A stretch of DNA of 64,000 nt, taken from IMG/VR virus record IMGVR_UViG_3300042889_001272, positions 62,001-126,000 of that record; one strand, given 5' to 3'. The position numbers were made by a program, and so were the translations under genes. Of the stretch, positions 25,494 to 45,026 are shown in pieces (position 1 is the stretch's first letter; each line of letters begins with the position of its first letter). Below the pieces are notes generated by a model. The model made no database searches and was not told the origin of the DNA. It worked only from the letters and a program-made list of their open reading frames with translations.

Positions 25494-27320
25494 ATGCGTT
25501 TTAACGAATTAACAGAACAATCACAATTAGATGAATTTCAATTGAATCCGACTGGTGCATTAGCCAGCATTATTAGATGGGGTGCTGAAAATCCAGCCGT
25601 GCTGGCGGCATTGGGTATTGCAGCCGGCGGCGGCGCATTCGCATTAACAAGTGGTGCAGCCGCACTAGGTCCATTGATGGCTGCTGTTACTTCTATTAAT
25701 GCGGGACAAGGCGCATTAGGTTTACTTAGTCTAGATAAACTCAAAGATTTAATTCAACAAAATCCCAGTCAGGCAGAAGGTTACATTAAAAAGTTAATTT
25801 ACAAATATGTAGGTGATCAATCAGACGTTGAAGAATTTGAAAAACTACACGCACAAACTGCTTATAAAGGTGAAACAGAATTCCGATGGAGAGCAGAAAA
25901 TTGGCCAGTAACAATGGACAAGAATGCCGCCGAAAGTTATTTAGAAAAGAATGACAAATATTGGTTGGATACTTACAATCAACCGCAAGGTGTGGCGGAA
26001 GGCGGCAGCGATTACGAAGAGTTACAGGACAAAATAGAGTGGTTAATGGGTGCGCCAAATTATCTAAAATCTGACGAGGCCAGAGAAACAGCAGCCTATA
26101 CACCAGATACTGATTCTGTCTGGGCCGGTTATCGTGATGACCAATTGACTAAGAAAAATGAATCAGTAACCGAAGCAAAGAGCTTACATAAGCGTGTTAA
26201 AATCGTCAAAGGACCGTATGCCGGAAAGTACGGCTGGATCCGCGAAATCAAACATGGCGCCTACAAAGGTGCGCCAAAAACATATTATGTCGATGTTGAA
26301 GGCGGTGGACAAGCTAACAACTTATCATCAAGTGAGTTGCGTTTGGCAAAAGAGCAAAATGTAACTGAATCCCAAGAAGATATGACTCCGAATTGGGCCA
26401 AGTATGTACTGGATCAAATTTACAACAGTGATGGCGCAGTCACACTGACTGACCTGTTTGACGAAGGTATCCCGGGCTTGCACGACATGTTCATGGCAAC
26501 TGCTAAAGCACATGGCCTTGATCCAGAAGAAGAATTTGAAGATGTTCAACATGAACTAACTGTAGAATTAGAAGATATCATCAAAGGTGGCCATGGATTG
26601 GACGAAGGCTATTACGATCTTAACAGTGATCTTCCAGGAATGGAACCAATTGACTTTTCATCTAATCCAAGTTTTAAAGATCTTATTACTCGTTATACAC
26701 AACTTGTATATCAAGGTCATGCCAGTGAAACAAGCCCAGAAGAAGATCAAGAACACGACGAGATCGAACAGTATGTTGCCAAACGTTTCGGTGAAAAAGG
26801 TTCTGCACATTTACAAAAAGCAGGCGAAGTTAGTTATTGGGGTCGAGATGACGGTAAAGGTAGCGGACACATTCGTTCCAGCAACTTAGGTCGTCCAAAT
26901 CAACCAGGTGGTAATTTCCGCACAACAAAATCAGGCAAGATGCACGGTCAAGATGTTAAAATGATGAAGAACAAAGTTGCAGATAGATTAGGTCGTCATC
27001 CTGAACCATCATTACCAGAAGGTAGATATGATAACCGCGATGCTTATCAACGTGATTATGACAACAGTGTAGCAGGTATGGGCAAGCGCCAATCTTATGC
27101 TTATAGTCAAGACGGCGGTGCCAACGATGAAGGATGGAACAATTATAAAGAACCAGAACCTAAGCGTAAAATTTACTCTTTGCAAATCAACGGAAAAACA
27201 TGGACACAGGATGGCAATACTGTTACGTTCTTTACACGAGAACGTGCAGAATCTGCAAAAAATTCTATACTGAACAAGCGTCCAGAAACAAAAATTGTAG
27301 TAATGGTACAAGAAGTTTAA
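25494..27320 (+). CDS. Modular putative internal head polyprotein
   Basis: Starts MRFNELTE (ATG 25494); modules joined by QGVAEG, ESVTEA, QNVTES, LDEG, LPEG. Confidence 0.7.
   Translation: MRFNELTEQSQLDEFQLNPTGALASIIRWGAENPAVLAALGIAAGGGAFALTSGAAALGPLMAAVTSINAGQGALGLLSLDKLKDLIQQNPSQAEGYIKKLIYKYVGDQSDVEEFEKLHAQTAYKGETEFRWRAENWPVTMDKNAAESYLEKNDKYWLDTYNQPQGVAEGGSDYEELQDKIEWLMGAPNYLKSDEARETAAYTPDTDSVWAGYRDDQLTKKNESVTEAKSLHKRVKIVKGPYAGKYGWIREIKHGAYKGAPKTYYVDVEGGGQANNLSSSELRLAKEQNVTESQEDMTPNWAKYVLDQIYNSDGAVTLTDLFDEGIPGLHDMFMATAKAHGLDPEEEFEDVQHELTVELEDIIKGGHGLDEGYYDLNSDLPGMEPIDFSSNPSFKDLITRYTQLVYQGHASETSPEEDQEHDEIEQYVAKRFGEKGSAHLQKAGEVSYWGRDDGKGSGHIRSSNLGRPNQPGGNFRTTKSGKMHGQDVKMMKNKVADRLGRHPEPSLPEGRYDNRDAYQRDYDNSVAGMGKRQSYAYSQDGGANDEGWNNYKEPEPKRKIYSLQINGKTWTQDGNTVTFFTRERAESAKNSILNKRPETKIVVMVQEV
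25986..26003 (+). repeat. GVAEG junction repeat, copy 1
   Basis: CAAGGTGTGGCGGAAGGC. Confidence 0.9.
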
Positions 27321-27321
27321 T

Positions 27322-27720
27322 ATGAGACTAAATGAATTCTTAGACAACGATGTTCCTGAAATAGGCGACATTTTAGAAGTAGAGATAGGCGACGAAGTTG
27401 TTGAAACTGTGATCACTGCCATAGACAATGGTGACTACATCTGTGAAACAGACAACAACACTAGTATGTCATTGCTTGAAGCAGAATATCACGGACGCAA
27501 AGTAAAATTGGGCAAACCCATGCCAGGCGATGTTAAAAAATCAAAAGTCTATGTTAGAAATCCTAAAACAGGTAAAGTAATCAAAGTAAACTTTGGTGAT
27601 CCTAATATGCGTATTAAAAAATCTAACCCTGCACGTCGTAAGAGTTTTAGAGCAAGACACAACTGTGCCAATCCCGGGCCGCGAACTAAAGCCCGTTACT
27701 GGAGTTGCAGTAAGTGGTAA
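27322..27720 (+). CDS. Putative internal head protein with basic C-terminal module
   Basis: MRLNEF start; LLEAEYHGRKVKL...KVNFGDPNM...RRKSFRARHNC...ARYWSC. Confidence 0.7.
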   Translation: MRLNEFLDNDVPEIGDILEVEIGDEVVETVITAIDNGDYICETDNNTSMSLLEAEYHGRKVKLGKPMPGDVKKSKVYVRNPKTGKVIKVNFGDPNMRIKKSNPARRKSFRARHNCANPGPRTKARYWSCSKW

Positions 27721-27737
27721 ACATTATAAATAATACT

Positions 27738-28187
27738 ATGAAAAAACTATTAATCTTAACCCTGCTAGCTATTAGCTCATTTGCATTTGCACAAACTGCA
27801 CCTAAAGAAAAACCCATGGTCATATATGACTGGAAAATAAACCGTGTTGTAGATGGTGACACAGTAGAAGTGGCCACACCTTGGGTACCAGATCCATTAC
27901 CTAAAAAGATCAGCATTCGTGTATTTGGGGTAGACACTCCGGAAAAAGGACACAGAGCGTTATGTCCCAGCGAAGCACAGCGTGGCGAAGCCGCCAGTGC
28001 ATTTACTAAAAAAGTTATCACAGAAAGCAAGACTGCCCGAGTGGCAGTCTTGAGCTGGGACAAATACGGTGGCCGTATGCTGGGCGATATCATTTTAGAT
28101 AATAATGTTAGCCTACGTGCGCTATTAATCAAGAATGGTTTTGCTCGAGAATACTATGGCGAAGCCAAGCAAAGTTGGTGTAATTAA
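27738..28187 (+). CDS. Thermonuclease (SNase-like) with signal peptide
   Basis: MKKLLILTLLAISSFAFA; RVVDGDT, IRVFGVDTPE, DKYGGRMLG, LIKNGFAR; TATAAATA at 27725. Confidence 0.88.
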   Translation: MKKLLILTLLAISSFAFAQTAPKEKPMVIYDWKINRVVDGDTVEVATPWVPDPLPKKISIRVFGVDTPEKGHRALCPSEAQRGEAASAFTKKVITESKTARVAVLSWDKYGGRMLGDIILDNNVSLRALLIKNGFAREYYGEAKQSWCN

Positions 28188-28199
28188 TTAAAATTTAAC

Positions 28200-28228
28200 T
28201 TGATATTTCATATGCTTTATGTTATAAT
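28200..28228 (+). promoter_or_regulatory. sigma70-type promoter
   Basis: TTGATA (28200) - 17 nt - TATAAT (28223). Confidence 0.75.
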
Positions 28229-28239
28229 AGTTGCACGAA

Positions 28240-28318
28240 ACACTCTACCTTAGGACCTTTGCGTTATAAGAGTGTAGGCGGCTGCTGCCTAGAATGTAAG
28301 TTACGCCAGACTTCATTC
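28240..28318 (+). promoter_or_regulatory. Structured 5' leader (candidate cis-regulatory RNA)
   Basis: Three consecutive stems: ACACTCT/AGAGTGT, TAGGC/GCCTA, GAATG-AAGT/ACTT-CATTC. Confidence 0.55.
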
Positions 28319-28343
28319 AAAGTGAGCATTAATTTTGGATATT

Positions 28344-29087
28344 ATGTTTACAGAAAAAGTCACTTGGGTTCATCACTGGAGTGATCGTACATTTAGTTTT
28401 AAATGCACTCGCAGTACAGCATTTAGATTTGTTGCCGGCGAATTTGCCATGATTGGCTTAATGATTGATGGCAAACGTGTGATCCGTGCATACAGTATAG
28501 TAAGTCCTCCCTGGAGTGAGGAACTGGAATTTCTCAGTATTAAAATACAAGACGGTGAATTAACCAGCAAACTTCAACACATAGAAGTTGGCAGTGAAGT
28601 CGTAGTCATGCCCAAATGCACAGGCACATTAGTAAATTCTGCATTAACACCTGGCGGAGAATTATGGATGCTGGCCACTGGTACAGGGCTTGCGCCATTC
28701 ATGAGTTTGATTCGTGATTTAGAAACACTGGAAACTTGGACGAAGATTCATATTGTACATAGTGTTAGACATAGTTCAGATTTAGCGTATAATGTAGACT
28801 TATCAACAGCGTTCAAACTTCATCCGGTAGATGGAGAGTTGCACGACTTGGTTGATGCTGTATTGGAATATCATCCTATACTTACTGGGCAAGGTGAACC
28901 CAGAATCGGCTATCAATTAACCACAGGCATGCTAAAGATTAACACTGACATAGATAAAATAATGCTATGCGGCAATTTAGAATTTAATCATCAAGTCTCC
29001 GATTGGTGCGAAGCTCGGGGTATGATGGAAGGAAGTATCCGTGAACCAGGAACATTTGTAGTAGAAAGAGCATTCGTAGAAAAATAA
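28344..29087 (+). CDS. fpr: Ferredoxin(flavodoxin)-NADP+ reductase
   Basis: FVAGEFAMIG, RAYSIVS, GELTSKL, LWMLATGTGLAPFMS, MLCGN, FVVERAF. Confidence 0.92.
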   Translation: MFTEKVTWVHHWSDRTFSFKCTRSTAFRFVAGEFAMIGLMIDGKRVIRAYSIVSPPWSEELEFLSIKIQDGELTSKLQHIEVGSEVVVMPKCTGTLVNSALTPGGELWMLATGTGLAPFMSLIRDLETLETWTKIHIVHSVRHSSDLAYNVDLSTAFKLHPVDGELHDLVDAVLEYHPILTGQGEPRIGYQLTTGMLKINTDIDKIMLCGNLEFNHQVSDWCEARGMMEGSIREPGTFVVERAFVEK

Positions 29088-29102
29088 GCAATAAATACTA
29101 CT

Positions 29103-29954
29103 ATGAAGACAGCAATCATAGTTAATGGAATGTGTCGACAAACATTAGTATCGTCAATGTCTTGGGACATATTTCCTTTTGAAGCTGATTGGTATCTTAG
29201 TACTTGGGATTACACACAAGAAACATATTTTCCAGACTCATTCACAAGCAAGAAAGAAATCGACAATATTAGGCATTTTTTTAAGCACATAGAAATAAAC
29301 AATTACGAAGAATATTTTACAAATTTTATAATTAAAGGTCGCGTCAACCCAATGTTTCGAAGTTTTAAATTATTAGATTCTATTAGAGATATAATTTTAT
29401 CACAGAAGTATGAAAGAATTATTATATTTCGACCAGATTTATACTTTAAAAAATTAGAACATCTTAATAATAATGACTTTGAAATTAATAATAACACAGT
29501 TAGAATTTTAGGAAGACATGAACCAGATAGTTTCTATGATAGAAAAAGAAGCACAGCAGATGATGTATTTTTTGTAATGCCCACTAATATATTTAAGATG
29601 TATTCAGATTTAAATTATATGTCTGAATTAAATGACAAATTTAATATTAGATCCGATGTACATAAATTAACATTTCATTTTTTCGACTCTTTGGGTTGTA
29701 ATGTAAAACTCATAGAAAAAATTAGATCGACTATTGTACGTAAGGACGCCGGCGACTATTATACAGAACATAACAATATCGATTTTACAATAATTGCAAG
29801 AATATTCGACAAAATGTATGATGAAAAAGATATGACAGGTGTTGGAAAGTTTTGGTGGCAATTTAATAAAATTATTATACATGAGCCAGCAGATCCAGAA
29901 AAGATTAGAATATCACAAGAGACTGGTGGAATTTTGAAATTAAGGAAACAATGA
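29103..29954 (+). CDS. AT-rich hypothetical protein, possibly glycosyltransferase-like
   Basis: ADWYLSTWD, IIFRPDLYF, DDVFF; TAAATA at 29092. Confidence 0.45.
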   Translation: MKTAIIVNGMCRQTLVSSMSWDIFPFEADWYLSTWDYTQETYFPDSFTSKKEIDNIRHFFKHIEINNYEEYFTNFIIKGRVNPMFRSFKLLDSIRDIILSQKYERIIIFRPDLYFKKLEHLNNNDFEINNNTVRILGRHEPDSFYDRKRSTADDVFFVMPTNIFKMYSDLNYMSELNDKFNIRSDVHKLTFHFFDSLGCNVKLIEKIRSTIVRKDAGDYYTEHNNIDFTIIARIFDKMYDEKDMTGVGKFWWQFNKIIIHEPADPEKIRISQETGGILKLRKQ

Positions 29955-30484
29955 AAACATTGATATTAGTAGCGTTACCGGAAGAGTTAGATAAGAATTT
30001 AGTAGATTGCCCTGTTGTTTATACAGGTGTAGGTGTGGCAAATGCCGCGATGCATACAACGTTGGCTTTACTTAAACATCGCCCTGACTTAGTTATTAAC
30101 TATGGCAGTGCTGGCAGTTTAAAAGGTATCACAGGATTAAACAGCGTAGCCAGTGTTTGTCAACGGGATGCTGATTGCAGTCCACTTCGCCAAAGAGGTT
30201 ACATGTTAGGCGAAAATGTGTTATACTATCACAGTGAAGAAGTAGGCGTTAGAGTAGGAAGTGGTAATAACTTTGTCACAGATCCTGATGCTTGGACACT
30301 TGAGCATTGTGATTTAGTGGACATGGAACTTTGGAGTATTGCTAAAGTCTGCGATCATGTTAAGATACCGTGGATAAGCCGTAAGTGGGTCAGCGACAAT
30401 GCTGACGGAGATGCTGGTGCAACATGGGAAGATGCACTACTAGCTGGACAAACAGAATTTGTTAATTGGTTTAATAACCGTTAA
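29951..30484 (+). CDS. MTA/SAH nucleosidase-like (PNP_UDP_1 family)
   Basis: LILVALPEE, YTGVGVANAA, VINYGSAG, GSGNNF, VDMELWSIAKVC, KWVSDNADG. Confidence 0.8.
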   Translation: MKTLILVALPEELDKNLVDCPVVYTGVGVANAAMHTTLALLKHRPDLVINYGSAGSLKGITGLNSVASVCQRDADCSPLRQRGYMLGENVLYYHSEEVGVRVGSGNNFVTDPDAWTLEHCDLVDMELWSIAKVCDHVKIPWISRKWVSDNADGDAGATWEDALLAGQTEFVNWFNNR

Positions 30485-30499
30485 TAATTACTTTTAATT

Positions 30500-30960
30500 T
30501 ACACATATGTTTGATTAGCGATGGCTAATCCCTATTGAGGTTGTACAGATTGTGCTGTGCCGTCGGAGTCTTAGGTTGTGTACGTCAGGAACTAACGAAA
30601 GGTTCTAAAAGATTGCGGCTCTGTGAAAAAGATACAACCGCAGATATTCACAGTTTCGCTGTATGGGATTGTGGAGTCACCGCTGACAGTCAAGTCTTGA
30701 GTAAGGGGTACCGGTCAACCGCCTCTGTTTTAATTAAATCTCATCAATACAGTATGAAAACGAACTCACGAAATGTTTTTATTTTTTGCCGGTTAACGGC
30801 AAATTATGACTTGAATCTACGAAATATTAAACCAGTGTTAAATCAAAATTCAAAACAATAAAGAGAATAGAAAATTGTTTCGAATACGAAGTATGAAGAA
30901 ACAATGTGCAGAGCACATACTAAGATGCGTGTAATATATGGATAGTTACGACTATCAGAT
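30500..30960 (+). ncRNA. Candidate large structured non-coding RNA (or origin-like element)
   Basis: ~500-nt gap in dense coding sequence with many hairpins (GATTAGC-GATG-GCTAATC, TGCGG/CCGCA, TTTGCCG-GTTAA-CGGCAAA, ATGTGC-AGA-GCACAT, GATAGT-TACG-ACTATC); strand not established. Confidence 0.5.
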
Positions 30961-30986
30961 AAATATTCATAATTACAGGAGCTTTT

Positions 30987-32396
30987 ATGTCAACAGATAA
31001 CTTTGGCGCATTAGGCGCAGACTTTTTTATAAGAACATTTGACAAGAGCTCGTTGATGAGTCAGTCAGATCTAGATCAACTCATTCAATATGTACAATTA
31101 ACCACAACGATTATAGCCGTAGGAGAATTTACTCCCGGTGTACAACAAAGTGTTTGGATGATACTTGAACGTGTAGATGTGCCATCAGCGCCAGGATACA
31201 CAGTAACTAACAACACAGAAGTTACAATGACTTCCGGCGGCTTGGTGACAATTGACTCGATACCGTGGACAAAGATAACAGGCAAGCCAAGTATCCCAAC
31301 AGATATTAACGATCTAACAGACACAGGTGGTCTGTTAGCAAATACAGGTGACTTTACATTCACTGGCGGTACTGCTAGTTTGCCGGCAGACAGTACTATG
31401 ATTCTTGATACTTTTCAAGTTGGTGGAAACAAGCAATCTACTTTAACTCTAAGTACTGCTACAATATCCAGTTTAGATGCTGGAAATAATCTAAGACTTA
31501 GAACTGGTTATGGAACTGGATTTGAAAAAGATTGGATACTTGGCGCTGATGGTTCTATTAGATTCCCCGATGCCAGTGTACAGACAACTGCTTATACTGG
31601 CAGTGATCATGCAGCCTATGAAATAACAAACACAAGTCCAGAAGGCTCTATATATTCTGTTAGCGTAGGCACTGATGGCGTTGTTAGTATGGTTACAAGT
31701 CGTGGTGGCATTGAGTTTGGCGCCATGCCAGAAGTTGGCGGACCAACACACTTCCACATTATGCGACCTGCTGGTGATAATGGTACAGACTTGTACTTCG
31801 GTGACGACTACAACTATGTTCTTCAACGCCCATCCGCATACGGCGGCGCCCCAGCATACGGTGTAGAGATTGGTGCCAACGATAATAATGGTGGTGCTCA
31901 ACAGGTATGGCGTTTTGGCACAGACGGCCACTTAACATTGCCAGCAGGTGGCGATATTAAAGACAGTACAGGTGCTAGTGTATTAGGTGGTGGTTTCAGT
32001 GGTGACTATGATGACTTAACCAACAAGCCAACATACAGAATAGCTGTGCCAACTGGCACAGGCCCTGGTGGCAACTTGCAAGCAGATTCACTGGCACTGG
32101 CTGGTCTTAATCCTGTTACAGATATACCATCAACTTGGGGTGGCGACTTGATACTTCAAGGTGGTGTAGGTGGCGCCAACAGCGACTTATATGGTGAAGT
32201 TAGAATCAAAAGCGGCCAGATTGGTGCAAATTATGAATGGCACTTTACCACTGATAAAAAGATTAAACTACCAGCAGGTGGTAGCATTGTTGACAGCACT
32301 GGTGCAAATGTATTTGTTTCTTTGACTACTCTCAAACAAGTTGTTGCAGACAGTACAGACTTTGCTGATTTTCAAACTAGAATTGCAGGTATGTAA
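30987..32396 (+). CDS. Putative tail fibre/virion protein
   Basis: WTKITGKP, repeated W.FG.DG.L.LPAGG.I.DSTGA motifs, DYDDLTNKP; TAAATA at 30960. Confidence 0.65.
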   Translation: MSTDNFGALGADFFIRTFDKSSLMSQSDLDQLIQYVQLTTTIIAVGEFTPGVQQSVWMILERVDVPSAPGYTVTNNTEVTMTSGGLVTIDSIPWTKITGKPSIPTDINDLTDTGGLLANTGDFTFTGGTASLPADSTMILDTFQVGGNKQSTLTLSTATISSLDAGNNLRLRTGYGTGFEKDWILGADGSIRFPDASVQTTAYTGSDHAAYEITNTSPEGSIYSVSVGTDGVVSMVTSRGGIEFGAMPEVGGPTHFHIMRPAGDNGTDLYFGDDYNYVLQRPSAYGGAPAYGVEIGANDNNGGAQQVWRFGTDGHLTLPAGGDIKDSTGASVLGGGFSGDYDDLTNKPTYRIAVPTGTGPGGNLQADSLALAGLNPVTDIPSTWGGDLILQGGVGGANSDLYGEVRIKSGQIGANYEWHFTTDKKIKLPAGGSIVDSTGANVFVSLTTLKQVVADSTDFADFQTRIAGM

Positions 32397-32412
32397 TAGA
32401 CCCTAGCATAAT

Positions 32413-32436
32413 AAAAGCCCCTTGCGGGGCTTTTTT
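32413..32436 (+). terminator. Intrinsic terminator
   Basis: AAAAGCCCC-TTGC-GGGGCTTTTTT. Confidence 0.9.
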
Positions 32437-32503
32437 ACGACTATAATTTATATCAATTAAATGTTTTATTTCTAATAAATACTAGTTATATATTGGAGTT
32501 AGT

Positions 32504-33286
32504 ATGATATTAAATGAGGGCGGTGATGTATTTGCAGACACCGAAGAATATGACCAAAAAGAAGCAACCGCTTTACAGGCTGTTGTAGATAAGGAATTAT
32601 CTTCTATTGGTCTATCATCCGTTATGATTGGCAGCGGTTTTCATCCTACTCCTGGACAAATGAGCGGGGATTTGGATCTACAAATAGAATTACAAGATAT
32701 CATTGATCGCTTCGATGTACAACCTGACCCTGCTGTTAAAAAAGATACTATAGAAAATGCTGCCCGCAGAACGCTGGCAGCACATCTACAAAGTAAAGGA
32801 TATCAAACAAAACGAGCAGGTATAAATGTTTTTATTCGTGTTCCTTATCAAGGTAAGTTTTATCAAGTAGACTTGGAATGTATATATAAGGTAGCAAAAG
32901 TAAGCAAATATCATCAGCATAAAATTCCTCAAGGTAGTACATACAAAGGCGTGGGCAAACAAATAATGATATCTATGTTGGCCAAAGAAAAAAATATGAT
33001 GTGGAGTGGTTGGGAAGGTTTATTTCAACGTACTCCTGATAATAAAAAAGGCGACATGGTCGCCGATGACTTTGATGATATAGCAAAAGTATTACTCGGG
33101 CCGCAATATGGTGAAGAAGATTTAGGCAGTGTAGAATCTATATTGGCTGCGCTGCCAAGTGCAAAAGCACAAGATTTATTGGCCAGGGCCAAGGCCGACA
33201 AAGCATGGAAAGAACGTGTGCCACGTGTAGAAAGTCTGCGTGTTGGCACCAATGAATGGTTCCGTAATATGATGAACAAGTTATGA
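32504..33286 (+). CDS. Pol-beta-superfamily nucleotidyltransferase-like protein
   Basis: MILNEGG start; GS...SGDLDL and FYQVDL motifs; TAAATA at 32476. Confidence 0.55.
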   Translation: MILNEGGDVFADTEEYDQKEATALQAVVDKELSSIGLSSVMIGSGFHPTPGQMSGDLDLQIELQDIIDRFDVQPDPAVKKDTIENAARRTLAAHLQSKGYQTKRAGINVFIRVPYQGKFYQVDLECIYKVAKVSKYHQHKIPQGSTYKGVGKQIMISMLAKEKNMMWSGWEGLFQRTPDNKKGDMVADDFDDIAKVLLGPQYGEEDLGSVESILAALPSAKAQDLLARAKADKAWKERVPRVESLRVGTNEWFRNMMNKL

Positions 33287-33942: not shown

Positions 33943-33946
33943 TAGT

Positions 33947-35915: not shown

Positions 35916-35923
35916 AAGAAATT

Positions 35924-38482: not shown

Positions 38483-38736
38483 GATCCGTAAATCAAAGTT
38501 ATACAACTATTGATATCATTGTCGATGAATTTGACGAACAAATTATTGATATGTTAAAACAACGGTATCCTGCTTTATCTATTGCAAGAGTAAATGCTAC
38601 TAGATTTAACAAAGATTCTACTAACTTGTTAAAGTTTTATCTATATCATTGGATATTTGATAACTATGAATCTGCTATCGTTGACATTAATAATTATTAC
38701 AATAAATATACTATTAGCACGAAAGTCGTAGCATGA
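38479..38736 (+). CDS. AT-rich hypothetical protein
   Basis: Coupled ORF lacking the shared N-terminal tag. Confidence 0.45.
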   Translation: MRSVNQSYTTIDIIVDEFDEQIIDMLKQRYPALSIARVNATRFNKDSTNLLKFYLYHWIFDNYESAIVDINNYYNKYTISTKVVA

Positions 38737-40949
38737 AATATCTAGAACTAAAAGAACAACTACTCAACGAAATTAATATGAGCCCCAGTGCTTTACGCCG
38801 TGCTGCCAAAGACATTGGTGCTAAGGCAGGCATGGAATTTGAAATGATTGTTCCCGGTGCTGCCGAAAGCGAAGAAGGTGATGACTATCAAGAACCAGAC
38901 TACGACAGTGATGAAAGCATTCGCAGTATTCAAGATGCCTATGATTTCTTCTACGATGGTGATTTTAATAGCCGTAGAGATGCAGAGCGCCTACGTGATC
39001 AAATGACAGACAACTACACTGATTGGCTGGGCACTCAATCTGGGGATCGCTGGGAATCTGATAAAGAAGAAATGATATATGATTGGCTGCGCTACAATGC
39101 CGCGCCCAGCGATGTATTTGGTATACTAGAAGTAGCTGCCAGCGCCAGCGGAGATTATCCTGATCCCTCTAAAGAAGATTACAGAAATGCTGCCGCCAAA
39201 GTAGCTGAAGATAGAATAGATCCATGGTATGACGATGCTTATCAAGATTTTACTGACAATTTCTACAGAGATGCAGACATGGAAAGTGAATGGCTCGAAC
39301 ATGAAGCTATAGAAAGTATGGTCGACGTTGAACAGAATTATAACATTGTTTGGCCACATTATCATAATCCGGATAACTCAGGCGGTGATGTTAGTATACA
39401 AGATGCCGCAGACAGTTTCAGTAATGCCATTGGTAAAGAAGTACAGGCCAGCGACAATTATCACAGTCGTAGTATAACAAGACCCAGTGCCACAGAATTA
39501 CACTATGTTGTGGAACCTGACGGTAGCTTAGAAGCAGATGAACCCGGAGATGGCGGTTTAGAATTTGTCAGTCCAGCATTGCCCATAGATGAATTATTAG
39601 ATGACTTGAAAAAAGTTAAAGCATGGGCAGATAAGTTTGGCTGTTATACAAATGACAGCACAGGTTTGCACATCAACGTCAGTGTTCCAAAATGGCAAGG
39701 TGATTTGCAAAATCTAGACTATGTTAAACTTGCTATTTTAATGGGCGACGAATATGTTTTAGAAAACTTTGGACGCAGTGGTAATACCTATGCCAAAAGC
39801 GCACTAAAGATTGTTAAAGATAATATCACACAGCGTCCAGAAGATGTCAAACGTTTGTTAGACACTATGAAAGAGCACTTAAACACCAGCGCCGCAAAAT
39901 TAATACACAGTGGCGCCACTAGTAAATACACCAGCGTTAATACCAAAGATGGTTACATTGAATTCCGTAGTCCAGGTGGTGATTGGTTAAACAGTAACTT
40001 TGATAAGATTGAATCTACATTATTACGTTTTGTTGTAGCCATGGATGCTGCCGCAGACGAAACAAAATACAAAGAAGAATACGCCAAGAAACTTTATAAG
40101 TTATTAGCAGGCAATGACAAAGATACTACAAATACCATGGTTTACTTTGCCAAATATGCCGCAGGTGAATTGCCTCAGAGCGCATTAAAGAGTTTTATTA
40201 AACAAGCACAGTTTGAACGTAAGGCAGGCAAAGAACCCAATGGTAAAAAAATGTGGTATCGTGTTGACAAAGAAGGACGTGGTAAGAGTGGTGCAAGCAT
40301 TGAAGTTGTTGCTAGATCAAAAGAAGAGGCATTAGAAAAAGCAGCCAGTAATTGGAGTTTAAAGCTAAGTGCATTAACTGCGGCCGCTGTTTATCCAGTT
40401 CGCCCCTATGAAGAGCAACGCTACGAAATATTTAATTTAAACACAAACAATAGCGTAGAAGATGCTGAAGGTATTACTAATGATAGAGATGCATTAGTGC
40501 GTTTGCAGGATTACATTGAACATGGTCCTCACGGATTACAACGTGGACAAGCAACAGATATGTTTGGCATAAGACGAGTTGGCGGAGATGGCGAACCTAT
40601 ACAACCAAATCCAATTCGTGCTACTGTAGGCGCTCCACAACCTGCTGGTAGTGTTGGACAATCAACTCCTAGACCTATTCCCGGTGTTATTGATATTGAG
40701 CCTGATATAGAACAGAACTTTACACCTGTACCAGGTAGCACAACAAACTTACAGCAACAACGTGCAACACCCGGCACGTTTACAGGTGCTTGGAAAGTAA
40801 TGAATGTCGACACTGGACAAGAATTATATAGATTCAGCGGCATTGGTAATTCGCAGTCAGATGCTAATGGTGTCGCTTTACAATGGATAAGACAACATGC
40901 CCCGAACACAGACTTGGTACAAATTGAAGTTGTGCCCATAATGAGCTAA
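38733..40949 (+). CDS. Putative amidoligase (COOH-NH2 ligase type 2) with C-terminal modules
   Basis: MKYLELKE start; GMEFE, VEPDGSL, GLEFVSP, STGLHINVS, IEFRSPGG. Confidence 0.7.
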   Translation: MKYLELKEQLLNEINMSPSALRRAAKDIGAKAGMEFEMIVPGAAESEEGDDYQEPDYDSDESIRSIQDAYDFFYDGDFNSRRDAERLRDQMTDNYTDWLGTQSGDRWESDKEEMIYDWLRYNAAPSDVFGILEVAASASGDYPDPSKEDYRNAAAKVAEDRIDPWYDDAYQDFTDNFYRDADMESEWLEHEAIESMVDVEQNYNIVWPHYHNPDNSGGDVSIQDAADSFSNAIGKEVQASDNYHSRSITRPSATELHYVVEPDGSLEADEPGDGGLEFVSPALPIDELLDDLKKVKAWADKFGCYTNDSTGLHINVSVPKWQGDLQNLDYVKLAILMGDEYVLENFGRSGNTYAKSALKIVKDNITQRPEDVKRLLDTMKEHLNTSAAKLIHSGATSKYTSVNTKDGYIEFRSPGGDWLNSNFDKIESTLLRFVVAMDAAADETKYKEEYAKKLYKLLAGNDKDTTNTMVYFAKYAAGELPQSALKSFIKQAQFERKAGKEPNGKKMWYRVDKEGRGKSGASIEVVARSKEEALEKAASNWSLKLSALTAAAVYPVRPYEEQRYEIFNLNTNNSVEDAEGITNDRDALVRLQDYIEHGPHGLQRGQATDMFGIRRVGGDGEPIQPNPIRATVGAPQPAGSVGQSTPRPIPGVIDIEPDIEQNFTPVPGSTTNLQQQRATPGTFTGAWKVMNVDTGQELYRFSGIGNSQSDANGVALQWIRQHAPNTDLVQIEVVPIMS

Positions 40950-40950
40950 T

Positions 40951-42030
40951 ATGAGACTACTAGAATTAAAAGAAGATAAATCATACCAACCTACTAGCAT
41001 TGATGTAGGTGACGAAGTACTTGTGGGTAAGTTTAAAAATCGCAGAGCAGAAGTTAAAGGGTTTACCACTGATGATAATAATCAGCCTGTGCTAAAAACT
41101 TCCAAAGGTGATCAACATTTATTCAAGCCACGCATTGCTAAACTTATGCCCAACGAGGTTAATGAAGATTCCGGTAACAGCCTTCAAACTATTATTCAAT
41201 CCTTTGTCAATAGTCCTTTAGGACAAAAATATAAACAATACGATTGTAAAACTGTAACCAGAGCATTTGTACAATGGACAGAACAAAATAAGATTTCAAC
41301 GCAGGTAGTTTCATTGGCTCCTCCCAGTGCTGATTTTATTGCAAAGAATCCAAGATATAAAGGCAAGAGTGGACAGGGCGATGGACACATTATGCCTATA
41401 GTAAATGGCAATGCCATTGACTTCACTGTTAGACAATTTGGTGTTAGTAGACCTTTTAACAATCCACTAGTAACGCCAACCAATAGTCTGCCAGCAGTAT
41501 ACGGCAAATTCGGATATTTTACAGACAAGCCTGAATGGTTTTTAGGAGGCAAGTCCCATTGGATTGGTGCATTGAACGCAATACCAAAAGAAATCTTTAA
41601 TCAAAATTTTGGCGATGAAATGTTAGAGCATACTATGACAGAAAACTTTGCCGATGGTCGAGTAAAAGGTAAGAGTAGTCCTGGACGTGTTAAGCGTAGT
41701 GGCGCAAGCTGTGACGGAAGTGTCTCTGATCTAAGATCAAAAGCAAAAGATGCCAGTAGTGAACGTGCTAAAATGTATCACTGGTGTGCTAACATGAAAA
41801 ACGGCCGTGCTAAAAACGAATCAGAAATGTTAGAAGATTTAAACGTTATATGGAAAGATGTATTAGAAGCAGGTGTATATAAAGGTTATCCTTGTACCAA
41901 AGACTGTAGCGGACATGCCGCAGGCGATCGTTGGGCAGATGCTAGAGATATAACAGATCCCAACGAGTGCCCTTACAGTAACAACAGTTTCTGGGAAGGC
42001 TGTCTAGCGCATACCGATGAACAAGAATAA
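40951..42030 (+). CDS. Modular putative internal head polyprotein
   Basis: MRLLELKE start; modules separated by VNED, MTENF, MLED, VLEA. Confidence 0.65.
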   Translation: MRLLELKEDKSYQPTSIDVGDEVLVGKFKNRRAEVKGFTTDDNNQPVLKTSKGDQHLFKPRIAKLMPNEVNEDSGNSLQTIIQSFVNSPLGQKYKQYDCKTVTRAFVQWTEQNKISTQVVSLAPPSADFIAKNPRYKGKSGQGDGHIMPIVNGNAIDFTVRQFGVSRPFNNPLVTPTNSLPAVYGKFGYFTDKPEWFLGGKSHWIGALNAIPKEIFNQNFGDEMLEHTMTENFADGRVKGKSSPGRVKRSGASCDGSVSDLRSKAKDASSERAKMYHWCANMKNGRAKNESEMLEDLNVIWKDVLEAGVYKGYPCTKDCSGHAAGDRWADARDITDPNECPYSNNSFWEGCLAHTDEQE

Positions 42031-42047
42031 CGAATAAATATACTATT

Positions 42048-43403
42048 ATGCGATTACTAGACCTTAAACTAACAGAAGCGGCACTTAGTGCAGGCGAACT
42101 AACAAAATACTTTGACTCTGAAACAGAGCCGACAAAGTGGAAACGTCTTAACGTTTTCTTAAACAAAGTCCTACAAAAAGAACCATTCGAATTAGTAGAT
42201 GGCAGCACAGCATTAGTTAATACATCTGAATACAAACGTATAGCAGATATTTTTAATTTAGGAACTGTGCCAAGTAATTTTAAAGTTGACACAGATAAAG
42301 GCCCAATGGGTTTAAGTAAGTTTTTTAAATCAGCAGAACTGGGAGGCAAGGGTGCTGGCGGCGCCGGTTTGTCTAACAAAGGTGAAGTCAGTGAGGGTAT
42401 TCTAGGTGCTAGTTTATTTGCTAAACTTATAGCAAGGACTCGTGGTAAGATTGATATTATCAGTGGTAATGACATTTGGAACGTCATTGACATGTTAAAT
42501 CAAACACAGGAAGATCATTACGGTGTTAAAGTTAAAGATGCTAGTAAATCTGCTGTTAATGATAGTATTCAATATACATTAAAGTTAAAGCCAGGACCAT
42601 ATGCAGACTTAATGGACGAAGCAAAACGAGCATTGTTAAGTGATGTAACTAACAGCGCAGTAGCATATGCTAATAGTGCAGATGCTCAAGCATACTGTGA
42701 ATATTTTTACTTAAATGGTAAGCCGGATATTATTCATGTTATTACAGACGGTATCAGCGGAAGCACTACTAAGAAATCTGACATTGAAGTTGTTGTCACA
42801 GATCCAAAAACTGGTAAAACTACACATCAACAACTTAACATTAGTCTTAAAGCAGGCAGTGACCAAATGGGTCAAGTCGGTCAAGGTGATGTTGGCGAAG
42901 AATTTGATGCTCAGAAGAAACTATGGAACTCTTTTGGCATTGACATCGAATCAAGCAGAGCTGAATTTAATAAAGTATTAGAGAAAAAAGGTTTAATAGC
43001 AGCCATAGAATCTATCTATCGTGATGCTGCCACATTCCTTCAAGACTTGTTAGCAGGCAGTTTTGATGATGCCGAATACTTGTTTTTAAAAGACTTGGTA
43101 AAAGGCATTGACTATTTTGCTACATTAAACGATCCCTCAGTTATTTTAGTTAGTTTAGAGCGCGGAACTTATGAAGTTATGAGCTTTGCTAACTTAGAAA
43201 AACAATTAAATAACATTGATTTAGACGCTAGTTATAACGAAAACTCTGCTACTCCTCAGATAGAAATATTTGATAAAAATAGTGGCAGTCAGTTATTTAG
43301 AATAAGAACAAAACGTGAAACTAAAAAGGGCGGTGGCATTTATGTCCGTAATTACATTGAAAAAGGTCCTTTGTTAAAACAGTTGACCAGCATCAAGAAG
43401 TAA
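42048..43403 (+). CDS. Possible PD-(D/E)xK nuclease-fold protein
   Basis: MRLLDLKLTE start; SEGILG...KSDIEV...NISLKAG spacing; TAAATA at 42035. Confidence 0.45.
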   Translation: MRLLDLKLTEAALSAGELTKYFDSETEPTKWKRLNVFLNKVLQKEPFELVDGSTALVNTSEYKRIADIFNLGTVPSNFKVDTDKGPMGLSKFFKSAELGGKGAGGAGLSNKGEVSEGILGASLFAKLIARTRGKIDIISGNDIWNVIDMLNQTQEDHYGVKVKDASKSAVNDSIQYTLKLKPGPYADLMDEAKRALLSDVTNSAVAYANSADAQAYCEYFYLNGKPDIIHVITDGISGSTTKKSDIEVVVTDPKTGKTTHQQLNISLKAGSDQMGQVGQGDVGEEFDAQKKLWNSFGIDIESSRAEFNKVLEKKGLIAAIESIYRDAATFLQDLLAGSFDDAEYLFLKDLVKGIDYFATLNDPSVILVSLERGTYEVMSFANLEKQLNNIDLDASYNENSATPQIEIFDKNSGSQLFRIRTKRETKKGGGIYVRNYIEKGPLLKQLTSIKK

Positions 43404-43439
43404 TACGTTATATTGACATAAATTGGCATAAATAAACAT

Positions 43440-43649
43440 ATGAAAATAAAAGAACTTATCAGCGAAGACGGCAGCGCAGGCGGTATTAGCAGTGGCGCTA
43501 TAGCTTCTGCTCCAGCCAGCAATTTGTTTGCTGTACCTATGAAACGCAATATGGCAATGACTCGCAAGCGACCTAAAAAGGAAGCTGAAGAATTTAAAAC
43601 TAAAAAAGATAAGTCTAATGTTTTAGAAAATGGAACTAACAATGGATAA
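43440..43649 (+). CDS. Small putative internal head protein
   Basis: MKIKELISE start; TAAATA at 43429. Confidence 0.65.
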   Translation: MKIKELISEDGSAGGISSGAIASAPASNLFAVPMKRNMAMTRKRPKKEAEEFKTKKDKSNVLENGTNNG

Positions 43650-45024
43650 GCAAAGAGCCAGACAGCTTTATGAACTAGCAGATCGTTTAAGCAAGCTAGA
43701 CATTAATTCGCTGTCAGAACAACAATTAGAACAACGTAATACAATGATTTCTAAGTTGCAAGAAGAAGTTAAAACAATTAAAGAGTTTGCTCCTGACGAT
43801 GGCGACGATGGCGCAGGTGGCGAAGAAGATACATTACACAAATATGCCCGTATGTGGTATAATGGCAATGAAACTACACAACAACAAGTTGAAAAAATAT
43901 TAGACCGTATGGGTTGGGAAATTGGCGAATTAGAATCAGAAGAAGGTGGCGCTTTTGTTGTACAATCAGGTGACGAAAATGGTAATAGTTATATTGGCTT
44001 TGCAGTCGCTGACTTGTTAGAAGGTATTACTGATAATAAAGACGCTGGCGAATATGATCAAGAAGGCGATATGGCTCGTCAAGATCTTGCCACTGCCGCT
44101 AATGCCGCAGAAGAATTACGCAGTATTTTAGACAGCGATGAGAACTTGCCAGAATGGGTTCAATCAAAGATTACTAAAGCAGTTGACTATTTAGATACTG
44201 TTCGTGATTATATGAAAAGTAAAGATCAAGATGTAACAGAAGCTTCACAGCGAGTTGATTCACTGGTCACTGACGCATTAAAAATAATGCGTGGTTCATC
44301 AATGAATGATGCTGTTCAAGCATTAAAGACTGTGCTTGGTGATAGAGAATACAATGGCCGACGCAATCATTACAATTTCTATGTTAGACAAATCATGGAT
44401 ATGTATAGTCAGCAAGGTGTGGCGGAAGGCGTTGAGGAATCCAATGTAAAGATTTTACAAAAGTTGCTTGCAGACGAAGGTTACACTTATCCAATTGGAA
44501 TACTAAGTCGAAGATTAAAACTTCTTTCCACAAATCAATCAAAAGTGCTTGCGAGATTGTTTGTGAATGCTCAAAGGGCACAAGATGAAGAATTAAAACT
44601 TGAATTGATTGATAAAATTGATGGTGTAATTTCCAGGGAAGCAGAGAGAAGAAGCGATCCATGGAAAGGTGTGGCGGAAGGCGTTGCAGAAACTTTGTCA
44701 ATGGACGAAGCCAAAAAAGTGCTACGTCATTATGGTGCTGATAATTTCAAAACAACCAGCAACGAATTGCATTTTTATAAAAACGGCCGCCCATTCAGTG
44801 TTGACTTGATCATGAACGATGATGCAACTCGCAGTGTAAGTCTAAGCCAGTTAAATTCAGCTACTCGTAGATTAAAAGGCCAAGGTGTGACTGAAACTAA
44901 AAAGACAAGCCCAAAACTCACGCCAGTTAATATCAAAAAAACTGACCCAGTCAGTGAAGAAATAAATACAGAAGCATACGAAAGACTACAAAAGGTTTTC
45001 GCATTTAAGAATTATGAAAGTTAA
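43630..45024 (+). CDS. Modular polyprotein with GVAEG junctions
   Basis: Junctions IKEFAP, LLEG, QDVTEA, QGVAEG, KGVAEG, QGVTET; start 43630 or 43642. Confidence 0.7.
   Translation: MELTMDKQRARQLYELADRLSKLDINSLSEQQLEQRNTMISKLQEEVKTIKEFAPDDGDDGAGGEEDTLHKYARMWYNGNETTQQQVEKILDRMGWEIGELESEEGGAFVVQSGDENGNSYIGFAVADLLEGITDNKDAGEYDQEGDMARQDLATAANAAEELRSILDSDENLPEWVQSKITKAVDYLDTVRDYMKSKDQDVTEASQRVDSLVTDALKIMRGSSMNDAVQALKTVLGDREYNGRRNHYNFYVRQIMDMYSQQGVAEGVEESNVKILQKLLADEGYTYPIGILSRRLKLLSTNQSKVLARLFVNAQRAQDEELKLELIDKIDGVISREAERRSDPWKGVAEGVAETLSMDEAKKVLRHYGADNFKTTSNELHFYKNGRPFSVDLIMNDDATRSVSLSQLNSATRRLKGQGVTETKKTSPKLTPVNIKKTDPVSEEINTEAYERLQKVFAFKNYES
44407..44434 (+). repeat. GVAEG junction repeat, copy 4
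   Basis: AGTCAGCAAGGTGTGGCGGAAGGCGTTG. Confidence 0.9.
44666..44686 (+). repeat. GVAEG junction repeat, copy 5
   Basis: AAGGTGTGGCGGAAGGCGTTG; 21 nt identical to 44414-44434, 252 nt apart. Confidence 0.9.
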
Positions 45025-45026
45025 TT

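What the first reader, a model, noticed from the sequence alone, without database searches (positions are those of the whole stretch)
25986..44898. DNA-conserved GVAEG junction repeat: candidate in-frame cassette-shuffling system for virion cargo polyproteins
Seen: the 12-mer TGTGGCGGAAGG occurs exactly five times (25991, 36538, 36730, 44418, 44670) in three different genes, always in the same frame (V-A-E-G). Pairwise identity extends to 23 nt (36719 vs 44407) and 21 nt (44414 vs 44666). Degenerate copies lie at 37157 (HGIAES), 37658 (HSVAEA) and 44881 (QGVTET). Each copy sits between unrelated ~50-100 aa modules. The codons GTG-GCG are invariant, although Val and Ala elsewhere in this AT-rich genome mostly end in A/T by eye, so conservation appears to be at the DNA level. 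A rough estimate assuming ~37% GC gives about 1e-3 expected copies of this 12-mer per 64 kb strand. Established: the T4 prohead protease gp21 cuts after Glu in hydrophobic-X-E motifs. Inference: the repeat has a dual role, as a recombination site for inserting or excising modules in frame and as the protease site that releases them during head maturation. That would be an integron-like diversifier of injected proteins that I do not recognise as described.
Basis: partly seen in the sequence, partly recalled or inferred. Interest (0 to 1): 0.92.

Follow-up and report, generated by a model that had tools for sequence, protein, structure and literature searches.

The report
Shuffling joints in phage cargo polyproteins
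A 15-21-base stretch encoding Gly-Val-Ala-Glu-Gly is kept almost letter-perfect between unrelated small protein modules in hundreds of uncultured giant T4-like phage contigs, and modules are gained, lost and swapped exactly at it, so it looks like an in-frame 'cut-and-paste' joint that probably doubles as a head-protease cutting site.

Summary
TGTGGCGGAAGG occurs five times, always in frame as V-A-E-G, in three genes (0.01 expected). It uses rare codons: GTG is 13% of Val and GCG 8% of Ala. The window is part of a 235-kb contig of an uncultured T4-like jumbo phage.

The same 17-18-mers have more than 220 distinct loci in IMG/VR. Of the core copies, 440 of 443 are in frame and the flanks are unrelated. 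The carriers include phages whose DNA polymerase is only 54-63% identical in protein to the window's.

Modules move at the repeat:
- Close relatives lack two modules of gene 3, leaving a single joint.
- A 192-nt module of gene 2 is about 95% identical in other contigs, with homology starting and ending inside the flanking repeats.
- 46% of high-identity match ends inside these ORFs lie within 6 nt of a repeat, against 3.9% for random positions.

The protease-site role is plausible but untested. The motif fits the gp21 rule (hydrophobic-X-Glu), and some motif-bearing loci carry gp21, scaffold and capsid homologues.

No recombinase or hairpin was found, so "integron-like" is not supported. General short-homology recombination suffices.

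This is a new variant of known T4-type shuffling (internal-protein leaders, PeSL cassettes, adhesin motifs).

The parts
25494..27320 (+). Polyprotein gene 1 (608 aa from the ATG at 25494). The leader is MRFNELTE|Q. It has one canonical joint and two degenerate candidate joints.
   Evidence: the first module alone is conserved in L204, and the last module's parts are in L205/L206/L009
25989..26003 (+). Canonical joint GGTGTGGCGGAAGGC (G-V-A-E|G)
26163..26372 (+). A 65-aa module bounded by two degenerate candidate joints (SVTE|A at 26163-26177, NVTE|S at 26358-26372)
   Evidence: PHROG/KOW-like hit on aa 231-298
35924..38482 (+). Polyprotein gene 2 (852 aa). The leader is MKINQVLVE|S. The first module is cytidylyltransferase/NMNAT-like, followed by four further modules.
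36536..36550 (+). Canonical core with a different first codon (ATTGTGGCGGAAGGC, I-V-A-E|G)
36548..36739 (+). Mobile 64-aa cassette (gene 2, module 1). It is about 95% nt identical in L179/L180/L181. Homology starts in the left joint and ends in the right joint, and the flanks are unrelated.
   Evidence: alignment A2
36728..36742 (+). Canonical joint GGTGTGGCGGAAGGT
37160..37174 (+). Degenerate joint GGTATAGCGGAAAGC (G-I-A-E|S), 3 mismatches from the consensus
37661..37675 (+). Degenerate joint AGTGTAGCCGAAGCA (S-V-A-E|A)
43630..45024 (+). Polyprotein gene 3 (464 aa, five modules)
44416..44430 (+). Canonical joint; left border of the module insertion
44428..44895 (+). Two modules (aa 267-422, 468 nt) present here but absent from the orthologous gene of six close relatives (DNA polymerase 97-98% identical), where a single joint remains
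   Evidence: module 3 alone is 82-85% nt identical in L117/L098, bounded by the joints
44668..44694 (+). Canonical joint followed at once by a second GVAE|T written with ordinary codons (GGC GTT GCA GAA)
44884..44898 (+). Degenerate joint GGTGTGACTGAAACT (G-V-T-E|T); right border of the insertion
25494..46810 (+). Cluster of 12 genes whose products begin M-[KR]-[ILFY]-x-[EDQ]-[ILF]. This is a leader-like signature resembling the T4 internal-protein targeting sequence. It is conserved as peptide only, not as DNA.

Best explanation
The repeat is the in-frame linker of 'beads-on-a-string' polyproteins in a large clade of uncultured T4-like jumbo phages.

Protein role (inferred). The linker ...(Q/K)-G-V-A-E|G is a site for the phage's gp21-type prohead protease, which cuts after Glu in hydrophobic-X-Glu. 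A polyprotein brought into the prohead by one N-terminal leader would then be cut into many small modules (median 77 aa). These would stay in the head and enter the host with the DNA, as T4 internal proteins do.

DNA role (shown by comparison). The GC-rich 15-21 nt that encode the linker are a patch of identity at which modules are inserted, deleted, duplicated and exchanged. This happens between polyprotein genes and between co-infecting relatives, and always in frame.

Enzymology (inferred). The ordinary, very active T4-type replication and recombination machinery is enough: short-homology recombination, annealing or template switching. No dedicated recombinase is needed.

Why the letters stay the same (inferred). 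Cassettes flanked by intact joints are the ones that keep moving and being copied. Joints that mutate stop taking part and decay. That gives the observed spectrum from exact to degenerate copies.
For: (1) Non-random and in frame. There are 5 copies against 0.01 expected. In the fetched loci 212/213 and 228/230 core copies read VAEG inside ORFs.

(2) DNA-level constraint.
- The window uses GTG for 13% of Val and GCG for 8% of Ala.
- In loci fetched by DNA polymerase rather than by the motif, 15/15 GVAEG use GTG-GCG with GGT before. Among 49 ordinary VAE sites, GTGGCGGAA is not among the 12 commonest codings listed.
- In loci not selected by the motif there are 98 in-frame sites within 3 mismatches of the 15-mer: 35 exact, 20 with one mismatch, 18 with two, 25 with three.
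- The N-terminal leader peptide of the same gene cluster varies freely at synonymous sites.

(3) Breadth. At least 120 loci carry the Q-form 17-mer and at least 120 carry the K-form 18-mer (107 of these new). Flanks are unrelated, about 0.1 bit per position. Carriers include phages whose polymerase is about 65% nt identical or 54-63% aa identical to the window's.

(4) Shuffling at the joint.
- Of 41 homologous module pairs, 36 have neither neighbour homologous.
- Gene 3 carries two extra modules relative to six close relatives, which keep one joint.
- Gene 2 module 1 is about 95% nt identical elsewhere, with borders in the joints.
- The L170 orthologue of gene 2 lacks modules 1-3.
- 46% of the ends of matches at 85% identity or more inside polyprotein ORFs lie within 6 nt of a joint, against 3.9% for random positions.
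- The same arrangements recur in independent metagenomes: L180/L181/L182, L122/L157, L124/L125/L147, and the window against L163/L168/L202.

(5) Protease and head link.
- gp21 cuts after L/I-X-E, and the 10-aa leader of T4 internal proteins targets them to the head (PMC9026906).
- T4 ipII and ipIII share MKTYQEFIAE|A, with the first 32 nt identical.
- L012/L028/L048 show portal, gp21-like protease, gp22-like scaffold with many [ILVM]-x-E sites, capsid protein, then a motif-bearing polyprotein. That polyprotein shares a module with window gene 2.
- The T4 gp23 site LTE|A aligns with LKE|N in this clade's capsid protein.
- In L371 the motif lies inside a scaffold-like protein.
- The residue after the cut is Gly in 234 of 309 modules.
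Against: - There is no proteomic or biochemical evidence for cleavage or packaging.
- The protease was not found in the window or in 28 kb fetched upstream of it.
- Gene 3 lacks the N-terminal leader signature.
- The first module of gene 2 is an NMNAT-like enzyme that could equally act in the cytoplasm.
- The motif is not universal. Homologues of gene 2 module 2 found by protein search mostly have other junctions (1 exact core in 15). Head-gene loci of the wider clade rarely carry it. The nearest cultured phage, Phosso, has none in its head region.
- 15-21 nt is shorter than the homology usually quoted for efficient T4 recombination (<50 bp patches; PMC2839356 citing Singer 1982).
- A translation- or RNA-level reason for the fixed codons is not excluded.
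- Contexts from closely related contigs are not independent, so some counts overstate n.
Confidence: 0.6

Rival explanations
1. The fixed codons serve translation or the mRNA. For example, a rare-codon or Shine-Dalgarno-like pause could let each module fold before the next is made, or an RNA processing signal could be involved. On this view, recombination at the repeat is only a by-product of its identity.
For: GTG and GCG are rare codons here. The motif is strictly in frame and on the coding strand. It sits exactly at domain boundaries.
Against: GAA, GGT and GGC are common codons, so only two of the five codons would be slow. There is no Rfam hit and no structure. The flanks are unrelated, so no larger RNA element exists. 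Degenerate joints with ordinary codons, such as GVAE|T at 44680, GVTE and SVAE, coexist in the same genes. The identical letters persist across phages with different GC content and codon usage (39-44% GC).
Confidence: 0.12
2. A dedicated sequence-specific enzyme (a recombinase, nickase or homing-type nuclease) recognises the 15-21-nt site and moves cassettes, perhaps as circles.
For: Conservation is sharper than simple homology use seems to require. The distribution is peaked at 0 mismatches. PeSL mini-circles are a precedent for circular intermediates in T4-type phages (PMC2839356). A GIY-YIG-like gene sits next to the polyprotein in L012/L028/L048.
Against: No integrase or recombinase family was found among the window ORFs scanned. 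The site has no dyad symmetry or hairpin. One indel joined a canonical copy to a degenerate copy sharing only about 11 nt. Many match ends inside these ORFs lie away from any canonical site. An enzyme cutting dozens of sites in its own genome would be costly.
Confidence: 0.1
3. The proteins are not head cargo. They are cytoplasmic multi-domain proteins whose linkers are uncut, or are cut by some other protease, and the resemblance to gp21 sites is coincidental.
For: There is no proteomics. Most polyprotein genes lie near replication and metabolic genes rather than head genes. One module is a nucleotidyltransferase.
Against: The peptide frame is strictly kept, with Glu followed by a small residue. 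Leader-like N-termini end in hydrophobic-X-E. Physical linkage to head genes is seen in three loci, and the motif lies inside a scaffold protein in a fourth. T4's own internal-protein genes are also far from its head genes.
Confidence: 0.15
4. There is nothing special here: chance, codon bias, recent tandem duplication of one linker, or chimeric metagenome assembly at a shared repeat.
For: The repeat is short, and metagenomic contigs can be chimeric.
Against: 0.01 copies are expected against 5 seen. There are 150 unique unrelated contexts. Ordinary VAE peptides use ordinary codons. 17-21 nt is shorter than the usual final assembly k-mers (my own knowledge). Identical arrangements recur in independent samples. 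The 21-mer has only 3 single, non-polyprotein hits in 596 Gb of bacterial genomes.
Confidence: 0.02

Closest known systems
T4 internal proteins (IPI-III) with their capsid targeting sequence, and the polymorphic IP loci of T-even phages (Repoila et al. 1994, cited in PMC12373910; Mullaney & Black 1996, cited in PMC9026906)
   Same: A short leader ending in hydrophobic-X-Glu is cut by the gp21 protease. The cargo behind it is highly variable and is injected with the DNA. The leader is conserved as DNA in T4: ipII and ipIII share their first 32 nt. The cargo is diverse anti-restriction proteins (PMC12373910).
   Different: In T4 each cargo is a separate gene with its own leader and promoter. Here many cargos are strung in one reading frame. 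The DNA-conserved element is the internal linker, while the N-terminal leader varies freely at the DNA level. The motif sequence is unrelated to the T4 leader.
PeSL (promoter-early stem-loop) mobile cassettes of T4-type phages (Arbiol et al. 2010, PMC2839356; PMC4122927)
   Same: Repeated conserved DNA motifs flank non-essential cassettes. Close relatives differ by insertion, deletion or replacement, leaving a single chimeric motif. General recombination is thought sufficient.
   Different: PeSLs are intergenic, about 50-70 bp, and carry a promoter and a terminator hairpin. This joint is coding, 15-21 nt, has no hairpin, and must keep the reading frame and a peptide. Mini-circles were shown for PeSLs but not here.
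[quoted passage not shown] 1998, cited there)
   Same: Short conserved in-frame segments separate hypervariable segments and allow them to be exchanged.
   Different: Those motifs are structural parts of one folded domain in a receptor-binding protein. Here the linkers separate independent, unrelated modules and look like cleavage sites.
Polyvalent proteins of phages and conjugative elements (Iyer et al. 2017, PMC5512222)
   Same: Many disparate effector domains sit in one polypeptide. They are predicted to be delivered with the DNA and then separated by proteolysis. A GNAT domain occurs in one polyprotein here, and the paper lists GNATs among the domains of polyvalent proteins.
   Different: Polyvalent proteins are predicted to be processed by embedded peptidase domains (mostly zincin-like). 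Their domains are large and recognisable. No conserved DNA linker is described. Here there is no embedded peptidase, most modules are small orphans without Pfam hits, and the cut would be made in trans by the prohead protease.
Integron gene cassettes
   Same: An array of promoter-less modules with a repeated site at each boundary, and presence/absence variation of single cassettes.
   Different: No integrase was found. The site is not a folded attC-type imperfect palindrome. The cassettes are parts of one ORF, not separate genes.
Inner-body and ejection proteins of phiKZ, 201phi2-1 and SPN3US, processed at S/A-X-E (PMC9026906, PMC5694885)
   Same: Giant phages package many proteins that a gp21-related protease cuts after Glu at a minimal motif.
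   Different: Those are separate genes with propeptides. No DNA-conserved linker or cassette exchange has been reported.

Membership tests
T4-type head internal (injected) proteins | N-terminal targeting leader of about 10 aa ending in hydrophobic-X-Glu | tested here: inconclusive
   Genes 1 and 2 start MRFNELTE|Q and MKINQVLVE|S. Twelve genes at 25.4-46.8 kb share M-[KR]-[ILFY]-x-[EDQ]-[ILF], with 0 internal matches in 17,098 aa. T4 ipII and ipIII read MKTYQEFIAE|A. Gene 3 lacks the signature. This is a resemblance of pattern only, and the regex was chosen after seeing the data.
T4-type head internal (injected) proteins | The phage encodes a gp21-type prohead serine protease | tested here: inconclusive
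   Met for the clade. gp21 homologues (36-37% identical to T4) lie in motif-bearing loci L012 and L028, next to scaffold and capsid genes, and there are more than 600 relatives in IMG/VR. Not found in the window or in 28 kb upstream of it. The rest of the contig was not seen.
T4-type head internal (injected) proteins | Cleaved at the motif, present in the mature head, and injected | not testable with these tools
   Needs virion proteomics of a cultured member.
PeSL-type mobile cassettes | Repeated conserved DNA motif flanking variable cassettes, with a single motif left at the empty site in close relatives | tested here: met
PeSL-type mobile cassettes | The motif is an intergenic early promoter plus a terminator stem-loop | tested here: not met
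   The motif is coding and in frame and has no stable structure (z-scores -0.9 to +1.3).
PeSL-type mobile cassettes | Circular excision products | not testable with these tools
   Needs inverse PCR or long reads from an infected culture.
Integron | A tyrosine recombinase (IntI) adjacent to the array | tested here: not met
   No recombinase family was found among the roughly 70 window ORFs scanned with Pfam or PHROGs. Only 92 kb of a genome of at least 235 kb were seen.
Integron | attC-type sites: imperfect inverted repeats that fold | tested here: not met
   the flanks carry no conserved sequence.
Polyvalent proteins (Iyer 2017) | Embedded peptidase domain(s) for self-processing, and large recognisable conflict domains | tested here: not met
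   No peptidase family hit in ten polyproteins. Most have no Pfam hit at all, one has a GNAT domain, and one has a weak cytidylyltransferase hit.

The most novel reading that the evidence does not exclude
The 15-21-nt joint is the recognition site of a dedicated, still unidentified phage enzyme that excises and integrates in-frame cassettes, possibly as small circles. That would be a true integron-like, frame-preserving diversifier of injected proteins, which would explain why the letters are kept more strictly than the peptide requires.
Probability: 0.1. Interest if true: 0.9.

Novelty: new variant of a known kind. Interest (0 to 1): 0.7.

Why it matters
If the reading is right, a large and abundant group of uncultured giant phages builds its injected protein arsenal the way exon shuffling builds eukaryotic proteins. 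Small modules sit in one reading frame, and a single short sequence is both the joint for swapping them and the mark for cutting them apart.

That gives a simple computational handle: split at the motif. Doing so would catalogue thousands of candidate injected effectors, most of them small orphan proteins. These are prime candidates for anti-defence functions, as T4 Ip1-3 turned out to be (PMC12373910).

It also gives a concrete case for asking whether selection or recombinational drive can hold synonymous sites fixed across deep divergence.

The linker and leader could also be useful for loading foreign proteins into phage heads, as the T4 targeting sequence already is.

Tried and rejected
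- Near-identity search of gene 2 against 50,697 GenBank phages found no match. The protein search found only an NMNAT-like domain in Methylophilales phages.
- Pfam and PHROGs on the three window polyproteins and seven others gave almost nothing, so module functions stay unknown.
- There were no Rfam families or tRNAs in the window, and no DNA hairpin at the five copies.
- Single-linkage module clustering with loose coverage collapsed into one giant family. I redid it with 75% mutual coverage.
- Intra-locus duplications are few (L061, L101), so tandem duplication is not the main process.
- Head-gene loci of the wider protease clade rarely carry the motif (3 GVAEG in 617 kb). Phosso's head region has none. 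The polyproteins are therefore not generally part of the head gene cluster.
- The 21-mer in 596 Gb of bacterial and archaeal genomes gave 3 single hits in GC-rich, non-polyprotein contexts. This is chance-like and gives no clue to the host.
- To find the protease on the window's own contig, one look-up failed on a wrong start codon. Three look-ups walked to contig position 33,705 without meeting head genes.
- The first T4 region fetched was the wrong one.
- Repoila 1994 is not held in the library and is cited only through papers that cite it.
- A tblastn of the leader-bearing gene 42048-43403 gave no virion annotation.

Full report
**1.

The 12-mer TGTGGCGGAAGG is present five times, all on the + strand, against 0.01 expected from dinucleotide shuffles. 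With the preceding GG(T) it forms a 14-15-mer. That form has four perfect copies, one copy with two mismatches, and a degenerate copy at 37160.

All five copies read V-A-E-G in three ORFs whose likely starts are 25494, 35924 and 43630.

Across the window's genes GTG is 13% of Val codons and GCG 8% of Ala codons. The coding of the five copies is therefore not what codon usage would give.

**2. What the window is**

All but two of the ~80 ORFs picked lie on the + strand.

The DNA polymerase is T4-family. It is 42-48% identical to those of jumbo myoviruses: Sinorhizobium phage Phosso, Agrobacterium Atu_ph07, Vibrio 2.275.O, and the GAP32/CBB group.

The window is identical to part of IMG/VR contig 3300042889_001272. 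This is JGI Ga0453676_0000004, 235,561 bp; window position 1 is contig position 62,001.

GenBank phages have nothing close at the DNA level.

**3. The motif is widespread and always a coding linker**

The K-variant AAAGGTGTGGCGGAAGGC hit the limit again, with 107 further loci.

In the first set there are 150 unique contexts. The flanks carry about 0.1 bit per position, so they are unrelated. Conservation extends to (c)AG CAA GGT GTG GCG GAA GGC.

Of 213 and 230 copies of the 11-nt core, 212 and 228 are in frame as VAEG inside ORFs.

The ORFs are polyproteins. One reaches 1,570 aa with ten or more joints. Inner modules have a median of 77 aa (5th-95th percentile 49-227) and are separated by (K/E/Q)-Q/K-G-V-A-E|G.

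Many loci also carry a DNA polymerase that is only about 65% nt identical or 54-63% aa identical to the window's. The exact letters therefore persist across deep divergence.

In 596 Gb of bacterial and archaeal genomes the 21-mer has three single, chance-like hits.

**4. The conservation is at the DNA level**

I used loci fetched through the DNA polymerase, not through the motif.
- All 15 GVAEG peptides use GTG-GCG, always preceded by GGT and followed by GGC in 14.
- The 49 ordinary VAE peptides use ordinary codons.

In all loci not selected by the motif, there are 98 in-frame sites within three mismatches of the 15-mer. Of these, 35 are exact, 20 have one mismatch, 18 have two and 25 have three. 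The distribution peaks at zero, with a tail of decaying copies.

There is an internal control. Twelve genes between 25.4 and 46.8 kb share an N-terminal peptide signature (M-[KR]-[ILFY]-x-[EDQ]-[ILF]), but their codons vary freely. A conserved peptide in this genome does not by itself freeze synonymous sites.

**5. Modules move exactly at the joint**

- (a) Polyproteins were cut at the joints and the modules clustered. Of 41 assessable pairs of homologous inner modules from different loci, 36 have neither neighbour homologous, 2 have one and 3 have both.
- (b) The orthologue of gene 3 in six contigs whose polymerase is 97-98% identical lacks modules 2 and 3 (aa 267-422, 468 nt). Module 1 is joined to module 4 through one joint, QQGVTE|TKK or QQGVAE|AKR. 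The crossover falls within the shared CAAGGTGT...GAA.
- (c) Module 1 of gene 2 (192 nt) is about 95% identical in L179, L180 and L181. The similarity begins inside the left joint and ends inside the right joint, and the flanks are unrelated. The L170 orthologue of gene 2 keeps the first and last modules but not modules 1-3.
- (d) Inside polyprotein ORFs, 46% of the ends of inter-locus matches at 85% identity or more lie within 6 nt of a joint. For random positions in the same ORFs the figure is 3.9%.

Assembly chimeras are an unlikely cause. The same arrangements recur in independent metagenomes, and the repeat is shorter than usual final k-mers.

**6. The protease and head-cargo half is indirect**

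From the literature: T4 gp21 cuts after Glu in L/I-X-E, and the first ten residues of T4 internal proteins target them to the prohead (PMC9026906, PMC3012670). Read from the T4 record, ipII and ipIII begin MKTYQEFIAE|A with 32 identical nucleotides. That is a DNA-conserved leader-plus-cleavage site in front of variable cargo.

In this clade:
- Three motif-bearing loci (L012, L028, L048) carry T4-like head genes; L028 shows the full order: portal, small acidic proteins, a gp21 homologue, a gp22-like scaffold with many [ILVM]-x-E sites, the capsid protein, a GIY-YIG-like gene, then a polyprotein with QGVAE|G joints.
- That polyprotein shares a module with window gene 2.
- The T4 gp23 maturation site LTE|A aligns with LKE|N in the clade's capsid protein.
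- In a more distant T4-like contig (L371) the joint lies inside the scaffold-like protein.
- After the predicted cut the next residue is Gly in 234 of 309 modules.
- 24 modules begin x-x-L-[NDK]-E-[FLAV], which resembles the free-standing leaders (0.4 expected). Modules and stand-alone leader-bearing genes may therefore interconvert.

Against this:
- I found no protease in the window or in 28 kb upstream of it.
- Gene 3 lacks the leader.
- No proteomics exists.

**7. Mechanism and rivals**

- *No dedicated recombinase is evident.* No recombinase family was found in the ORFs scanned. The site has no dyad symmetry or hairpin. One indel used a canonical and a degenerate copy sharing about 11 nt. 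This fits the general T4-type recombination and replication machinery acting on a short GC-rich patch in an AT-rich genome, as proposed for PeSL cassettes (PMC2839356). A dedicated enzyme remains possible (about 0.1).
- *A translational or RNA role is not excluded (about 0.12).* It explains less, because joints with ordinary codons coexist in the same genes and only two of the five codons are rare.
- *The motif is not universal.* Homologues of gene 2 module 2 found by protein search mostly have other junctions. Head-gene loci rarely carry it. Phosso lacks it. I read this as turnover: joints that stay canonical keep recombining, and the others decay.

**8. Comparison with what is known**

The closest systems are:
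- T4 internal proteins and their polymorphic loci;
- PeSL cassettes;
- the in-frame conserved motifs of T-even adhesins (PMC3157838);
- polyvalent proteins (PMC5512222), for the idea of one polypeptide delivering many effectors.

This case differs in four respects. The DNA-conserved element is an internal coding linker of 15-21 nt. Cassettes are parts of one reading frame. There is no embedded peptidase. There is no regulatory hairpin.

A full-text search for the peptide found no phage paper, and two further searches found no description of such polyproteins.

**Verdict**

This is a real and widespread feature. It is a new variant of a known kind. The recombination half is well supported by comparison. 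The proteolysis half is plausible and testable.

Noticed in passing
window 25494-46810: Twelve consecutive-ish genes start with M-[KR]-[ILFY]-x-[EDQ]-[ILF] (for example MRLLELKE, MRLNEFLD, MKINDILRE). There are no internal matches in 17,098 aa, and the signature is not conserved as DNA. It may be a capsid-targeting-like leader marking a large block of candidate packaged proteins, including an amidoligase-domain protein (38733-40949) and a DUF6267 protein (34372-35520).
   Followed up: partly
window 42048-43403: Homologues in Synechococcus phages align only from residue 114. The window protein has an extra 113-aa N-terminal part that starts with the leader signature and ends at VSE|G, which looks like a removable propeptide.
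   Followed up: no
modules in L050, L056, L069, L075, L088, L110, L116 and window 36740: 24 of 309 inner modules begin x-x-L-[NDK]-E-[FLAV] right after the predicted cut (0.4 expected). This echoes the N-terminal leader of stand-alone genes, so modules may once have been separate genes, or may carry their own targeting element.
   Followed up: partly
window 1-5200 and L293/L402 (contig 43-67 kb): A near-complete Suf iron-sulfur cluster assembly set is encoded by the phage: SufB, glutaredoxin, SufC, SufD, SufS-like aminotransferase, SufE and A-type carriers. Upstream lie fatty-acid desaturases, a peroxiredoxin, dCMP deaminase, an S8 peptidase and a chitinase-family hydrolase.
   Followed up: no
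window 35924-36547 and 60638-61108: There are two cytidylyltransferase-like (NMNAT-type) domains in one genome. One of them is the first module of a polyprotein. If it is packaged, it would be an injected NAD-related enzyme.
   Followed up: no
window 55781-56956, 61964-62794, 61105-61905, 47309-47749, 7660-8484 (-), 27714-28187, 28335-29087, 29951-30484: Auxiliary genes: sulfate permease, GTP cyclohydrolase I, UDP-glucose dehydrogenase, Dps/ferritin, PhoH (one of only two picked ORFs on the - strand), a staphylococcal-nuclease homologue with a signal-peptide-like N-terminus, a ferredoxin-reductase-like protein and a nucleoside phosphorylase.
   Followed up: no
window 11377-13578: A 733-aa ClpA/ClpB-type double AAA+ protein (PHROG 'ATP-dependent protease', E 4e-243). 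It is conserved at about 66% nt identity in several motif-bearing loci.
   Followed up: no
window 33977-34372: The stretch just upstream of gene 34372 is 76-78% nt identical in L103, L017, L090 and L084. That is higher than most of the region. It is covered only by a weak ORF (33848-34375).
   Followed up: no
L012 3241-3987, L028 7870-8592, L048 (- strand): A GIY-YIG-like gene sits between the capsid gene and the polyprotein, much as segD sits after gene 23 in T4.
   Followed up: no
L061 3312-3478 vs 4620-4786; L101 819-1236: The same 50-aa cassette is 99% identical in two different polyprotein genes of one contig, and another contig has a 99% tandem module duplication ending at a joint. These are intragenomic copying events.
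   Followed up: partly
L371 (- strand, ORF 6848-8156): In a more distant T4-like contig (protease 41% identical to L028's) the exact core lies inside a gp22-like scaffold protein, just before a module starting GSLEEISL.
   Followed up: partly
window 5412-5891: A 159-aa ORF matches only a fragment of the bacterial DNA polymerase III alpha NTPase domain (PF07733). This is odd in a phage that has its own family-B polymerase.
   Followed up: no
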